From: Fimbriosthenelais zetlandica
Lineage: Eukaryota
Assembly: GCA_977030845.1 (NCBI GenBank)
Contig: OZ365113.1
Span: 15,686,001 to 15,750,000, forward strand
DNA: 64,000 bases
Direction: 5' to 3'
Positions within the stretch are counted from its first letter, which is position 1, and every line of letters starts with the position of its first letter. Of this stretch, positions 14,510 to 29,100 are shown one piece after another. The notes under the pieces were generated by a model. It saw only the letters and a list, made by a program, of their open reading frames with translations. It made no database searches and had not been told where the DNA came from. The translations under genes and the position numbers were made by a program.

Positions 14510-17407
<2,898 letters not shown>

Positions 17408-18535: not shown

Positions 18536-22234
<3,699 letters not shown>

Positions 22235-23110: not shown

Positions 23111-26100
23111 ATGGGTTCCTCTAATTCACATACATCCAATAATGGAGAAGGTATTATGAGCCTCAATACCTCGAACTCACTAAGCCACTCGGTGAGTAGC
23201 AGTCAGGCCGAGAGAACCAAGTCCCAGGATGAGAAACGTATACGGACTATGGCGAGACTGATAACAGCTAAGGCCAGACGTGACCAAGGCAAGGATATGG
23301 AGGACCACGAATATACTCTGGTAAATAATTTAGTTTATTTCTCGGAAATAAACATAAACATTTTTCATAATTTGAAAACCACTCCCTTAGCCTATAATGA
23401 CATTTAATGCTATATTACAACTCTCCCACACAAAAAAAAAAATGAAAATGAAAATAGGCCTATTATGCATTTAATTCTAATAGGAATGTCGAAATTTAAA
23501 CTGACTATTTGTTTCCATTTTGTAAACTAATGTTCATTTAAAGATTTAAAAGCAATGGTTTCATATTGTGATAACTAGTTAGGGCCTACTGGTTGAAATT
23601 AGGCAGGCTTTAGATTAGAATTTTAGATCTATTTATTTCTGATTGCAGGAAAACATTCAACTGTTAAAGCACATGTTTAAGGAGATGGATCCAACTATAA
23701 TGCGTACTTCTGCTCAGATCCAACATGGCGAGATCCAGCTGTCTTTCAAGTACGAGGCCTCCAAGCAGATGCTCCTCGTCAAGATTATTAAATGTCGCGA
23801 CCTGTCAGGCAAAGACTTGCGTGGCCACACTGCAGATCCTTACGTTAAGGTTTTTATTATTTCGTTTTCAAAACTCCGAACAATATGATGAAAACTGCTC
23901 GGGGAAACATTCTACTATGTTGTCAGTAATAATCTTGTTAGTACTTTTCTGTAGGATTTCTAATGAGTTTCCACATACCTGTAGGTTTTCCGTAGGTCTT
24001 TTTCATAACCATTGTTTTTGATTTCCATGCCTTGCCATTATAATTTATATAACGTTTTTCACTTGCTTTTATTTCTTTTCAGCTGTACATGCATCCTTTA
24101 CAAGACGAAAGTGACATTCGCCAGAGTCAAGTGAAGTTGAAGACACTGAATCCTACCTATCATGAGATTGTCACGTTCCCCACCACTGATTCTTCTCTCA
24201 CAGATGGCGTCCTAGTTGTTCAGGTAGCGGACTATTACCATTTTAATACTCTCTGTTTCCACGAGAGGGCAGCACTGTGCTACTCTCACCAGCCATCATT
24301 CAGTAACCTTGAAAACACACAAAATCACGTTTCCTCAATGATATATTTTTTTAGGCTTTAGTCGCACTAGATTTAAATTATAGGCTCATGCTAATGTTTT
24401 TCAAGACATTTTAAAATTTTCTTGGTGCGCTGCTATTATTATTGGAACAAATATTGGATGACTATCGTTACTTTAAAATGTCTGCACATGTGATTTAAAT
24501 GATTACATTTCAATATTCAGGTTTGGGACAAAGACATAGTGGACAGGGATGATTTGATAGGAGAAGCCATCATCCGACTTAACACATTTGAATTTGATCG
24601 GTCTCCAATTCATACCGCCTGGTATACTCTTCAGGCAGAGGTGAGTAGTAAATTGAACTGAATTTCTAAAAATTATCGGTTTAGATACGTATAGAACTAT
24701 CATAGAAATATCATTTAATTCATCGGAAATTTGAATATTTCTTCTGCAAAATTGGTGCAAAATTCTTTTTTTTTCAGACTGATCTTGAGATTACTGGTGA
24801 CCTTGATCTTTCTCTGGCCTATGAACTTCCAAGTACCTTGCGAGTGACTGTTCACGGTGGGAATGGCCTGGCCAATCACTACAGGCAGACCGGGTACCCC
24901 AGTCCTTTTGTACGATTTCAGATTCCCGGTGTGGGTGCTGTTTTTGAAACGCAGGTAAAAAGAATTATGTGGACGTCTTGTCACTTTATAATATTAAACC
25001 CGGTGTTGACTCTGAGCTATGATAGGCTGAAGTTTTCATGGACACTATAAGGCCCTATTGTATTATGTGTTGGTAATGTCATTACCGAGTTTCAGTTGAG
25101 TCGCCTGCTATTGTGGGCGCCACCAGTTGCGTCATTATTTACCTATGAATTGTGACATCCGTTACCCTTTCCCCCACTTTGACCAGTTGTTAGACTGTGG
25201 TTCTGAAAATGGGCAATATCAAGCGAGAAAAATGTATGGACTTATTATAGGGCCTTTTGAATAATAAACTTATCGGTCCCGCAATGCTATGGTTTGCGAA
25301 GCTGGCGGGAAAGAAGGGAACTAGAGTTTTAGTTCCGGCTTTTGACACAAGGTGGGAGGTACGAGCTCCAAGCATAGCGCTTGTATAGGCTACCGTTGTA
25401 TATGAAGTGTTGGTACTACATGTAGTTACAAATACAATACGTTGTAGTTATAAATGGGCAGTTCCAATTATAATAATGTACATCCCCTCCACAAAATTAA
25501 TCGTTGAACGTAGCCTACATAACTGTGCATGTAGGCCTGCATTATTTATGGCAGGGCCTTATAAGGGCCCTTTGAATATTAAACTGATCGGTCCCGCCAT
25601 TCTATGGTTTGCGAAGCTGGCGGAAAAGAAGGGAACTAGAGTTTTAGTTCCGGCTTTTGACACAAGGTGGGAGGTACGAGCTCCAAGCATAGCGCTTGTA
25701 TATGCTACCGTTGTATATGAAGTGTTGGTACTAGTTACAAATACAATACGTTGTAGTTATAAATGGGCAGTTCCAATTTTAATAATGTACATCCCCGCCA
25801 CTTATGGAAATCATAATTAATCGTTGAACGTGGCCTACATACCTGTACATGTAGGCCTGCATTATGATTTCAAGCTTTCAGAATTTAATCGATGAAAATT
25901 ACTAACACTCTTGCTCTTATTATTTGCTGATTATTTAAGGTGAGAGAAGATACTGCGGACCCTTCATGGGAAGAAAGTGTAGAATTCAATGTCCCAACTG
26001 AGGAATTTGGTGAAAGGTAAATTCTCTAAGTAAATTATAGACCAAAATGCATATTGCTGAGATTACGAATAAATATCGATCATTTTTTACCCGACGCATT

Positions 26101-29100
26101 AAACTACTTTTGAAATGAACTTTCTGGGTAACTTTATCTATACAGTCTGTATGTTTATTACAGGTACATTATATTCCATGTCATTGATCGTGGAGACAGG
26201 CGGGAAAATGATTCCCTCGGACAAATTGTGATAGATTTGAGCAACTTTAATCCCGACACAGGCTTTAGGGGCAAATTTGATCTGGCAGATTTGGTAAGAT
26301 ATTGCTCAATATTGTCAAATTGCAATAATTATTTTAGGAGCCTAAAATAAGGCGTTTTACTGAAATTTTCAATTTTTTTTCTAGAAAAACAGTGATCGAC
26401 TACGGGCGAAATGGTTCCAGAATGCCACGGTACAGGAATTCAGGGAAGCTCTGCTCGCCCACACTGCCTTCAGACAACCCAAGTTCCTCTTCCAGAAACA
26501 TAATGGAACGAAGGTAGGTAGAAAGTCTAATATTTTCTTTGTTTATTTTAGATATGGTTAAGATATTACGTTTCAAAATACAATGTTCATTTTTTATCAG
26601 GTCATAAGCTTGTAAAACTAAAAATTTAACGTTTCAGGATGGTAATTGAGAATTTGATTATGGCATCTAATATGGTATTTAAAGGAAAATTCCGGTCAGA
26701 TATAACATGACGGCCTACAGTTAGTTAAATATGAATACTAACGCTCACGGAAGCTTCAAGAAATAAACGTGTACCGTTAATAAATCAAGCGTTCACAAAC
26801 CGGCGCCGTTTTGCTCCTTCTCGGTCATTCGCGCTAACTTTCCTCGCGTCAACACGGGGGCCATTTTGTATGTCACATGATCTCATGGGCCAGACTGTGA
26901 GGCCAATGCGCATGCGCGAAGAGAGTACTTCCCGTTTCTCAAACATAAACATTCTCACGTGTGGAGCGTGGAGCTTTCCTCAAGGAGACAGAAAGCCAGA
27001 GAGCTATCGATATATCCAATTGATTTTATATGGAAAAGGGGAAATATGCCGGGATGTGCAGCGGTTGGTTGCTCCAACGTATCAAGAGCTGGAGAGGAAG
27101 AGAAACGTGGGAGATATGTAGCCTTTCACAGGTTCCCAAGGTCCAACCCAGCTCTGACTAACGCTTGGCTTGCCGAACTGCCTCGCTGTCAGAAGTTGAT
27201 TCTTCTCCCTCCTCACTCCCTTCCTCCTCCTCCCCCCAGTCACATGTCGGTTCGAACATGAAAGGTTCTAGATGGGAAGCATTTACCTCGAAATCGAACT
27301 CACTCCCTTCGCTATCACTGCTCTCAGCTGATCGAGACGCCATTTTTGTTGTTGTCCCCGGCGTGGTCACGTGGTACAGAATACCACGTGACTTCCGGTT
27401 CTTTTTGCGCCTCCTCCGTGGAGAGTTCCCCAAGGTACGCGATATGGCAGCCAAGAGGGACTATACCGCCGATATGCCCCCGCCGATATGTTTTCGCCTT
27501 GTACGACAAAACTAGAAAAGAACTGAATCCCTAAACCGGTAAATATCGCTTATATAGTCCCTTGGCTATCACCTGAGGCCCCATGTTATATCTGACGCTT
27601 GAATTCCTTTAACAATCTGCAGATGGCTTTTTGTCTAAATATTGGAAAGATGCAGAATGAAAGAAGATGTCATATAAGATAATCGTTGTATGTGTGATGC
27701 GGGAATGAGAAAACTCTGGTTGATATGAACGATAACTCATTACTTATACATACATGCTCCTTGTGTATCTTACCAGTAGTTCAGCGGTATCCCTATAGGT
27801 GGTGGGACCTGGTCTCACCAAATGCATTTACTCAACTTGTCCGACCGCTTGCCCCCTCCCCCTGCAACTCCAGGCCCCACCTGAGACCATGTAGTATAAA
27901 TCATTTCAATCAGATATTTTCAATATTCAAATGTATTATTGTCGATGCGGTCTTAATGCGATCTTTACTATGATATTAAGTCACCCATCATCTATTTTCG
28001 ATGCATGATTGGGTTGGATGATAGGTCGTTAGTGAGATTTACGATGATGATATCGTCCTATTCTGTGATAAACTTGACTATAACAGCATTCACTGCTACC
28101 TATATTTCCCCATTTCCCTCCCAGTTAGTTTAAAGTATCTCTATTGGCAATTTTAATGAGGGTTGTTTAATCAAATCACTGAACTCATCAGTTAATTTTA
28201 CACTTGCTCAACCACATTCGATTTTCTTTTTAACCATTATTTGTTGCTATATATATACGATTTGAGTAAATGTTTGTACTAAATGAGCAATGGATTAACT
28301 TATTGTTTTTGTGACCATGCCAAATCAAATGTTTTCATCAAAGGGATTAACATTTTATAGGCGTACTTGTACAAACAGATTTTTGAATTTTGCCCAATTT
28401 TAAATAACAGCCAGTGTATTTTGCTCACTTCGGAGCCCAGCCCTAAACTAGCTGGCTTGTAAGCAGTCAGTGGGAGGTGGAAGAATTATTAACCCAAGTC
28501 ACATCCCTGACAGCCACTATTAACAACAGCCCAGCATACGTTTGCCCGGAGTCTCAAAGACGCGCCTCAACCGCAATTAGTTTGAAGCAGACGACATTTT
28601 GTCTGAAATTGAAACATCTGTCCTGGGTGACCATGTGACCTGGCGACTTCCCCATGATTACAAGGCAGGATGCGCACACAATGTCCGAGCCACAATGGAG
28701 TCATAAATCCGTCAGGCCCCATTCACTTTCACAGTTCCACCTATCATGCCTACAATTGTATCTTATTTTCATAAAGTGAAGGCAGCCATTTTTAGTGATG
28801 CTTTTTGGCCGGTTGACCAGCCGGGGGTGTGTATCAGCACAACCAGCATGTGTGACCAGTAAAGAGACAGGTGGTAGGTTGACTCTCTATACCAAGCTTT
28901 ACCCTTATCTGGCTTTGATTAAGATGAAGGGGAGTGCTCTTTGTTGGAATTGGATTCTTTAATTTTATTCCTACAATAAACATGCACATATTTAAAAGCC
29001 ATTCTTGGTGTGAATAGGAGAAGTGTCGCGAAGTATCGGGTTTCATAATCAAATGCGCATCTGGTACAATGTTTCAAAAAACACTATTTTTTAAGTTTTA

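What the first reader, a model, noticed from the sequence alone, without database searches (positions are those of the whole stretch)
26683..27608. Kolobok deletion derivative preserving both inward-facing gene starts (THAP and KolX-like)
Seen: TTAA duplication, AG..CT ends, bipartite TIRs, a THAP start on + (27046) and an acidic ORF start with an LEPFMFEP motif on - (27343), fused at about 27174 by loss of the centre. Each end keeps promoter motifs, including an 11-bp E-box inverted repeat at 27366-27392 next to ACTTCCGG. Established: Kolobok elements duplicate TTAA and encode a transposase plus an accessory protein (KolX). Inference from memory, to be verified: the acidic P-x-x-F-E-P leader resembles standalone proteins related to the P2X7 cytoplasmic ballast domain, which has been linked to KolX. 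The element places an antisense promoter inside a host intron, and its intact ends imply an autonomous partner in the genome.
Basis: partly seen in the sequence, partly recalled or inferred. Interest (0 to 1): 0.7.

Follow-up and report, generated by a model that had tools for sequence, protein, structure and literature searches.

The report
Short Kolobok transposon, centre deleted
This 926-base stretch is a recently mobile, non-autonomous copy of a known kind of jumping gene (a Kolobok DNA transposon of the two-gene, KolX-carrying type) that has lost its middle and keeps only the first few dozen codons of each gene; it is an ordinary new family member, not a new kind of element.

Summary
Window 26683-27608 starts AGGAA and ends TTCCT. 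It has a perfect 15-nt inner inverted repeat and TTAA on both sides. The genome holds 18 full-length copies (97-100% identical), and all 18 are flanked by TTAA/TTAA in unrelated DNA.

The core interpretation also holds.
- A single long copy on the same chromosome shares the right end. It runs on from the acidic ORF into a three-exon KolX gene (Pfam P2RX7_C on exon 3; all three zinc-cysteine clusters present).
- That KolX gene faces a transposase whose catalytic motifs match published Kolobok-1_XT and Kolobok-1_BF.
- A second, independent deletion derivative (L018) extends the THAP ORF by 96 bp.
- Together these place the deletion joint at a 3-bp CTG microhomology, window 27178-27180.

Three further claims are not shown.
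- No intact autonomous partner is in this assembly: the long copy lacks its left end and THAP exon.
- Promoter activity could not be tested because no RNA run was listed.
- Host-intron placement is plausible (a donor-like site lies 170 bp upstream) but unproven.

Non-autonomous Kolobok derivatives are well known, for example the Xenopus T2-MITEs. Interest is low.

The parts
26679..26682 (.). TTAA target-site duplication, left
   Evidence: All 18 full-length copies have TTAA here, with unrelated DNA outside it.
26683..26709 (+). Left terminal inverted repeat: outer AGGAA plus a perfect 15-nt core at 26695-26709
   Evidence: I2. Found at 37 places in the genome against 0 for the reversed control.
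26710..27045 (+). Upstream region of the transposase gene, carrying promoter-like motifs: CCAAT 26903-26907, GCGCATGCGC 26908-26917, CACGTG 26956-26961. Function not tested.
   Evidence: Largely conserved in the 740-bp sister form.
27046..27177 (+). First 44 codons of the transposase gene: the front half of a THAP domain (two of the four zinc ligands), cut off mid-domain
   Evidence: Pfam THAP, E 4.7e-5, profile 1-39/87. In L018 the same ORF runs 96 bp further and scores E 1.6e-11, profile 1-61/87, including the C-x2-H ligands.
27178..27180 (.). Deletion joint: CTG shared by the left interior (seen in L018) and the right interior (seen in the long copy)
   Evidence: Three-way alignment.
27181..27343 (-). 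First ~54 codons of the KolX gene: an acidic leader with LEPFMFEP that stops before the cysteine-rich ballast domain
   Evidence: Colinear at 98% with the long copy. There the ORF continues into WCSCTRC..ECVCC and two further exons. Pfam P2RX7_C hits exon 3 at E 2.6e-7, 31.2 bits, against a cut-off of 23.5.
27344..27581 (-). Upstream region of the KolX gene. It holds the 11-nt E-box inverted repeat at 27366-27392, ACTTCCGG at 27391-27398, and two CCGCCGATATG direct repeats at 27466 and 27480. Function not tested.
   Evidence: I6, D8. The inverted repeat is decayed or deleted in 4 of 6 copies of the older sister form, and the ETS-like site reads ACTTTCGG in the five of those six copies that retain it.
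27582..27608 (-). Right terminal inverted repeat
   Evidence: I2. Found at 19 places in the genome against 0 for the control.
27609..27612 (.). TTAA target-site duplication, right

Best explanation
Window 26683-27608 is a non-autonomous internal-deletion derivative of a two-gene Kolobok DNA transposon of the Kol0 (KolX-carrying) lineage.

The parent element had this layout: left end, then a THAP-DDE transposase gene reading inward, then a KolX (P2X7-ballast-like) gene reading inward from the other side, then the right end.

One deletion, joined at a 3-bp microhomology (CTG, 27178-27180), removed several kb of centre. What remains is about 360 bp of upstream DNA and 44 codons of the transposase gene, plus about 265 bp of upstream DNA and about 54 codons of KolX.

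Neither remnant can make a working protein. The THAP piece lacks two of its four zinc ligands, and the KolX piece lacks the whole cysteine domain.

The element therefore moves only if a Kolobok transposase supplied from elsewhere binds its intact ends, cuts it out and pastes it into a TTAA. That step is inferred from the family's known behaviour.

Shown here: the structure, the joint, the multi-copy state with TTAA duplications, and very recent spread. Inferred: the trans-mobilisation mechanism, and the origin of the deletion by faulty gap repair after excision.
For: Ends, copies and recent spread:
- 18 full-length copies, each with TTAA/TTAA and unrelated flanks.
- Mean pairwise difference among the 17 copies of the 926-bp form is 1.2%. 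Two copies are identical, lie 188 bp apart and sit at separate TTAA sites.
- The AG..CT / AGGAA ends fit the published Kolobok RR..YY and T2-MITE AGGRR rule.

The long copy at G000:C19:9577978 onward:
- It has the same right end with a TTAA beside it, and is colinear with element positions 496-926.
- It continues into a three-exon KolX gene with in-phase GT/AG junctions.
- Pfam P2RX7_C hits exon 3 above the curated cut-off, and hits exon 1 below it but at the right profile positions.
- The only PDB hits of exon 3 are P2X7 residues 546-593.
- All three published zinc-cysteine clusters are present.
- About 490 bp beyond the KolX stop, on the other strand, lie transposase exons with GDARCDSPGH, ATDRH, DMWH, NHLWW, KWLSILQHITNKH and FCHTGDLEVYHN. 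The same blocks stand in Kolobok-1_XT and Kolobok-1_BF in the published alignment.

Other derivatives and families:
- L018 is an independent derivative with other breakpoints and extends the THAP ORF.
- A 740-bp older sister form has a third pair of breakpoints and its own TTAA duplications.
- Other Kolobok families in this genome show a transposase hit and a KolX hit facing each other 4-9 kb apart at 7 or more loci.
Against: - No single copy holds both the THAP exon and the catalytic core, so their being one gene rests on the published Kolobok domain order and on the shared ends.
- The transposase was matched to Kolobok by motif blocks read against a printed alignment, not by a scored alignment or a tree. 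Pfam has no model that hits the core exons.
- No intact autonomous copy of this family is in the assembly, so the present source of transposase is unknown.
- KolX exon 2 alone and the leader alone match no family or database protein.
Confidence: 0.92

Rival explanations
1. It is a non-autonomous piggyBac element. piggyBac also duplicates TTAA, and a few piggyBac families encode a KolX-like protein.
For: TTAA duplication. PMC9587614 reports KolX-like proteins in a few piggyBac families.
Against: - The termini are AGGAA..TTCCT, and the paper separates Kolobok from piggyBac by its RR..YY ends. That piggyBac ends read CCC..GGG is from my own knowledge.
- The transposase beside KolX in the long copy carries the Kolobok blocks, including the C/DxxH signature (DMWH). 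It gives no piggyBac Pfam hit.
- The piggyBac KolX-like proteins lack most of the seven cysteines. This KolX has them.
Confidence: 0.02
2. The element is more than an inert hitch-hiker. Its two retained, converging gene starts, about 300 bp apart, are transcribed toward each other. They either yield double-stranded RNA that damps the parent transposon, or act as a two-way promoter or enhancer on the host C2-domain gene.
For: - Both upstream regions with promoter-like motifs are kept.
- Three independent deletion forms all keep both start codons.
- The element sits 170 bp past a donor-like site of a host gene.
Against: - No expression data could be obtained.
- Internal deletions keep the ends for mechanical reasons, because the ends are needed for mobility.
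- The E-box repeat decays in the older sister form, and its ETS-like site is changed.
- Copies differ by random changes, a third of them CpG-type. Several copies have lost one or both start codons.
Confidence: 0.06

Closest known systems
Kol0 lineage of the Kolobok superfamily (Kolobok-1_XT, Kolobok-1_BF, Kolobok-1_CTe; Kapitonov and Jurka 2007; Kojima and Bao 2022, PMC9587614)
   Same: - TTAA duplication and RR..YY ends.
- Two genes: a THAP-bearing DDE transposase with the C/DxxH signature, and KolX with the P2X7-ballast cysteine domain.
- The transposase motif blocks match Kolobok-1_XT and Kolobok-1_BF.
- The KolX middle and tail read very like Kolobok-1_CTe_2p, for example RNVLVSLN.., AAYR.FTWWV and VIPACA.
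   Different: The window copy is a 926-bp remnant holding only the first 44 and about 54 codons of the two genes. The only long copy of this family in the assembly lacks its left end.
Xenopus T2-MITEs (non-autonomous Kolobok elements; Hikosaka et al. 2018, PMC6004289)
   Same: Short non-autonomous elements with a TTAA target and an AGGRR terminal motif, in families with near-identical, recently moved copies.
   Different: - T2-MITEs are shorter and far more numerous, and have no recognisable gene remnants.
- This family has about 18 copies (plus older sister forms) and still shows both parental gene starts, so its origin by deletion can be read directly.
Internal-deletion derivatives of other cut-and-paste transposons (Ds from Ac, KP and other deleted P elements); from my own knowledge
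   Same: The centre is lost, both ends are kept, there is short microhomology at the joint, and movement depends on transposase supplied in trans.
   Different: - Different superfamily.
- Unlike KP, the retained THAP piece in the window copy lacks half of its zinc ligands, so a DNA-binding repressor is unlikely.
- The L018 variant does keep a full C2CH set.

Membership tests
Kolobok superfamily | [quoted passage not shown] | tested here: met
   TTAA lies on both sides of all 18 full-length copies, with unrelated flanks. The same holds for 740-bp sister copies and beside the right end of the long copy. The definition is from PMC9587614.
Kolobok superfamily | Termini 5'-RR .. YY-3' (AGGRR in Xenopus T2-MITEs), unlike piggyBac | tested here: met
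   AGGAA..TTCCT in every copy. The rule is given.
Kolobok superfamily | [quoted passage not shown] | tested here: met
   The long copy's exons hold GDARCDSPGH (D), ATDRH (D), DMWH (DxxH), a Cys/His stretch H..C.H, and FCHTGDLEVYHN (E). The same blocks are in Kolobok-1_XT and Kolobok-1_BF in Data S5. The comparison was by motif blocks, not a scored alignment or a tree.
Kolobok superfamily | THAP DNA-binding domain at the start of the transposase | tested here: inconclusive
   A THAP start sits at the left end (Pfam). No single copy holds both THAP and the catalytic core. The long copy's first surviving exon begins just after where THAP should end. The domain order is taken from PMC6004289.
Kol0 lineage (KolX-carrying Kolobok) | Second gene KolX with similarity to the P2X7 cytoplasmic ballast, including the conserved cysteines | tested here: met
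   - Pfam P2RX7_C on exon 3: 31.2 bits against a cut-off of 23.5. Exon 1 scores E 0.026 at profile positions 57-101.
- The only PDB hits of exon 3 are P2X7 residues 546-593, E 0.059.
- The clusters WCxCxxC, CC..CIT and IPxC..IR..FP are all present.
Kol0 lineage (KolX-carrying Kolobok) | The window's minus-strand ORF is the start of that KolX gene | tested here: met
   98% DNA identity and colinearity from the right end through the ATG to the joint. The ORF continues into the cysteine domain only in the long copy.
piggyBac superfamily | piggyBac-type DDE transposase and piggyBac-type termini | tested here: not met
   No piggyBac Pfam domain was found on any exon. The termini are AGG..CCT.
MITE (strict sense) | Very short, very high copy number, no coding remnants | tested here: not met
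   926 bp, about 18 copies, and both parental gene starts still readable. It is better called a deletion derivative than a MITE.

The most novel reading that the evidence does not exclude
The derivative is a working regulatory cassette. Its two converging transposon promoters, now only about 300 bp apart, would produce overlapping sense and antisense RNA covering the 5' ends of both Kolobok genes. That RNA would feed small-RNA silencing of the parent family. It would amount to a self-made 'killer' locus, and would also explain why no intact autonomous copy is left. Alternatively, the minus-strand promoter could drive antisense transcription into the host C2-domain gene.
Probability: 0.07. Interest if true: 0.5.

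Novelty: new member of a known kind. Interest (0 to 1): 0.2.

Why it matters
- It gives a clean, dated example of how a two-gene Kolobok element decays into short non-autonomous forms. Three independent deletions are seen, one with a readable microhomology joint.
- It shows that the family was moving very recently in this genome, since two copies are identical. That is useful for repeat annotation and for avoiding false gene calls: 'THAP' and 'P2X7-like' fragments would otherwise be predicted at about 18 places.
- It changes nothing about what is known of Kolobok or of the origin of the P2X7 ballast domain.

Tried and rejected
- Word search of the protein database with KolX exon 1 (scored over residues 38-141): 38 candidates, none significant. 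A PDB search with exon 1 gave only a chance hit. So LEPFMFEP as a general KolX leader motif stays untested.
- Pfam on KolX exon 2 alone, and on four of the five transposase core exons: nothing. The fifth gave a weak sub-threshold Mutator-like hit. Pfam seems to have no Kolobok core model.
- Search for the long copy's left end: no match to element positions 1-495, and no THAP match by tblastn, in the 30 kb beyond it. L018's extra 96 bp occur nowhere else. Every exact left-end match in the genome belongs to a short element.
- RNA evidence: no run was listed. The promoter and intron questions stay open.
- Rfam: no RNA family in 26400-27900.
- The spliced KolX and transposase models were searched exon by exon only. 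The joined models were not built, folded or searched.
- The large representative-protein search was not used, because the family scans and the published alignments left no protein open.
- Rejected readings: a piggyBac element, and a host bidirectional promoter. The multi-copy state with target duplications rules out the second.

Full report
**1. What is in the window.**
- TTAA stands at 26679-26682 and again at 27609-27612.
- Between them the sequence begins AGGAAAATTCCGGTCAGATATAACATG and ends CATGTTATATCTGACGCTTGAATTCCT.
- The ends pair as an outer AGGAA/TTCCT, a short unmatched stretch, and a perfect 15-nt core at 26695-26709 / 27582-27596 (I2).
- An ATG at 27046 on the plus strand opens an ORF whose first 44 residues match the first 39 of 87 positions of the Pfam THAP model (E 4.7e-5).
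- An ATG at 27343 on the minus strand opens an acidic ORF with LEPFMFEP. That ORF matches no Pfam family on its own.
- The 11-nt perfect inverted repeat with two CACGTG boxes is at 27366-27392 (I6). ACTTCCGG follows at 27391-27398.
- Rfam finds nothing in the region.

**2. It is a mobile family, and a young one.**
- The genome (447 Mb, 79 contigs) holds 18 full-length copies at 97-100% identity, plus shorter relatives.
- All 18 copies have TTAA on both sides and unrelated DNA outside it.
- The 27-nt end patterns, allowing 3 mismatches, occur 37 times (left) and 19 times (right). The reversed controls occur 0 times.
- The 17 copies of the 926-bp form differ pairwise by 1.2% on average. About a third of the changes are CpG-type.
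- Two copies on C11 are identical, 188 bp apart and head to head, each at its own TTAA. This looks like a very recent local hop.
- Several copies have lost one or both start codons or carry frameshifts, as expected for non-coding passengers.

**3. Where the centre went.**
- One hit begins at element position 496. It is the right end of a long copy at G000:C19:9577978 onward. It has TTAA beside its end and is colinear at 98% with positions 496-926.
- A second element, L018 on C11, is 98% identical in both arms but has other breakpoints. Its left arm runs 96 bp further.
- In the three-way alignment, the window follows L018 up to GCCGAA-CTG and follows the long copy from CTG-CCTCGC onward.
- The joint is therefore a 3-bp microhomology at window 27178-27180.
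- An older 740-bp sister form (82-94% identical, with its own TTAA duplications) joins element position 380 to 561. It keeps five THAP codons and about 33 KolX codons.
- So at least three independent deletions of one parent are on record.

**4. The minus-strand ORF is the start of KolX.**
- In the long copy the same ORF does not stop at the joint. It runs on through ..NEWCSCTRC..ECVCCLE.. to a GT donor.
- Two further exons follow with in-phase GT/AG junctions (L032 1131-1263 and about 1603-1806).
- Pfam P2RX7_C hits exon 3 at 31.2 bits (cut-off 23.5, E 2.6e-7, profile 145-191). It hits exon 1 weakly at the expected place (E 0.026, profile 57-101).
- The only PDB sequences that exon 3 reaches are P2X7 receptors, residues 546-593 (E 0.059).
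- The three zinc-cysteine clusters defined for the ballast domain are all present: PxWCxCxxC, CC..CIT and (L/I/V)PSC..IR..FP (PMC7016195).
- Exon 2 alone matches no Pfam family.
- Exons 2 and 3 read very like Kolobok-1_CTe_2p in Figure S6 of PMC9587614: RNVLVSLN....AAYR.FTWWV....IPACA..IR..F.
- That paper states that the second protein of the Kol0 group, KolX, is similar to the P2X7 ballast and is probably its source.
- The exons were searched one by one. The joined model was not built, as required.
- The window copy keeps only the acidic leader (about 54 codons) and none of the cysteine domain.

**5. The partner gene is a Kolobok transposase.**
- About 490 bp beyond the KolX stop in the long copy, on the other strand and reading toward KolX, lie five open exons (L032 5743 down to 2299).
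- They carry ..IVVAGDARCDSPGHNAKYGSYTLMD.., ..VLATDRH.., ..HQLDMWHFAK.., ..NHLWWSCATC.., ..EKWLSILQHITNKH..C.H.. and ..FCHTGDLEVYHN.
- The published alignment of Kolobok cores (Data S5) shows the same blocks in Kolobok-1_XT (..GDGQFDSPGHSAKY....ATDRH....QFDVWH....NHLWWC....KWRSLLYHIANKH....FCHTGDLENFHS) and in Kolobok-1_BF.
- These blocks include the three catalytic residues and the C/DxxH signature that the paper gives for Kolobok and its allies.
- Pfam offers only a weak Mutator-like hit and no piggyBac domain.
- The comparison is by motif blocks, not a scored tree. That is the main weakness of the superfamily call.
- THAP at the start of Kolobok transposases is established (PMC6004289). Here L018 shows the domain through its C-x2-H ligands (E 1.6e-11).
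- Other Kolobok families in this genome show a transposase hit and a KolX hit facing each other 4-9 kb apart at seven or more loci. So the two inward-facing gene starts of the window copy are exactly the two ends of such an element.

**6. No intact partner was found.**
- The long copy's interior is single-copy in the assembly.
- Its transposase lacks the THAP exon, and the element lacks a left end. Nothing matching element positions 1-495, by DNA or by THAP peptide, lies within 30 kb.
- L018's extra 96 bp occur nowhere else.
- Every exact left end in the genome belongs to a short element.
- The transposase source could be a copy absent from this individual or assembly, or a related Kolobok family.
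- Earlier notes of this scan report intact two-gene Kolobok elements elsewhere in this genome. I did not read them and do not count them as support.

**7. Promoters and host context.**
- The promoter-like motifs are there, but no RNA run was listed, so nothing can be said about activity.
- In the older sister form the E-box repeat is mutated or deleted in four of six copies. ACTTCCGG reads ACTTTCGG in the five copies that retain it. This argues against strong constraint. The left-hand motifs are better kept.
- The host gene on the plus strand has two C2 domains (Pfam C2 on five exons between 23643 and 26293).
- After the last C2 exon there is a clean GT donor at 26294, an in-phase candidate exon at 26385-26513 and another GT donor at 26514. 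The candidate exon matches no Pfam family.
- The element lies 170 bp past that donor, so an intron is plausible. No downstream exon was recognised, and the candidate exon could also be terminal.
- If the placement is intronic, the KolX start would indeed be antisense to the host gene.

**8. Verdict.**
- This is a new member of a known kind. Non-autonomous Kolobok elements with TTAA and AGGRR ends are long known.
- The only mildly unusual point is that both parental gene starts are still legible, which lets the deletion be mapped to the base.
- The most novel reading left open, with low probability, is that the converging promoters make regulatory RNA.

Noticed in passing
L010/L011 = G000:C11:25127532-25128458 (-) and 25128646-25129572 (+): Two 927-bp copies with no differences between them. 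They lie 188 bp apart, head to head, each with its own TTAA pair. This looks like a very recent local hop of the family.
   Followed up: partly
L018 = G000:C11:27582934-27583868: An independent deletion derivative whose 71-codon ORF keeps a complete THAP C2CH set (Pfam E 1.6e-11). It could in principle make a THAP-only DNA-binding peptide, unlike the window copy. It is the only place in the assembly that holds this stretch of the parent.
   Followed up: partly
L020-L030 (for example G000:C1:33780089-33780829): An older 740-bp sister form joins element positions 380 and 561 and has its own TTAA duplications. A third variant of the left end (..TTCCGATCAG..) occurs at 7 places, two of which were not among the DNA hits.
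   Followed up: partly
G000: C29:14.12 Mb, C29:12.83 Mb, C21:24.37 Mb, C19:8.81 Mb, C21:16.68 Mb, C1:43.23 Mb, C11:33.01 Mb: Other Kolobok families (33-52% protein identity) show a transposase hit and a KolX exon-1 hit facing each other 4-9 kb apart. Several have stop-free frames and occur as identical copies, so they may be intact.
   Followed up: no
L032 about 762-976 (intron 1 of KolX in the long copy): An unrelated short repeat of about 150-200 bp, found at 40 or more places in the genome at 72-76% identity.
   Followed up: no
G000:C13 33.68, 35.04 and 35.60 Mb (L057): KolX-like exons at 77-88% DNA identity to the long copy's KolX. The conserved blocks stop at the start of exon 3, and no close transposase lies beside them. 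They may be broken or solitary KolX copies.
   Followed up: no
window 23643-26513 (+): A host gene with two C2 domains (Pfam C2 on five exons). An in-phase candidate exon at 26385-26513 ends in a GT donor 170 bp before the element.
   Followed up: partly
window 16118-16689 (+) and 19219-21072 (-): ORF translations read by eye like RuvB-like helicase exons and Sec61-alpha exons. These were not tested with any tool.
   Followed up: no
window about 25251-25817: A direct duplication of roughly 270 bp in the intron upstream of the last C2 exon. The same ~45-residue translation appears twice.
   Followed up: no
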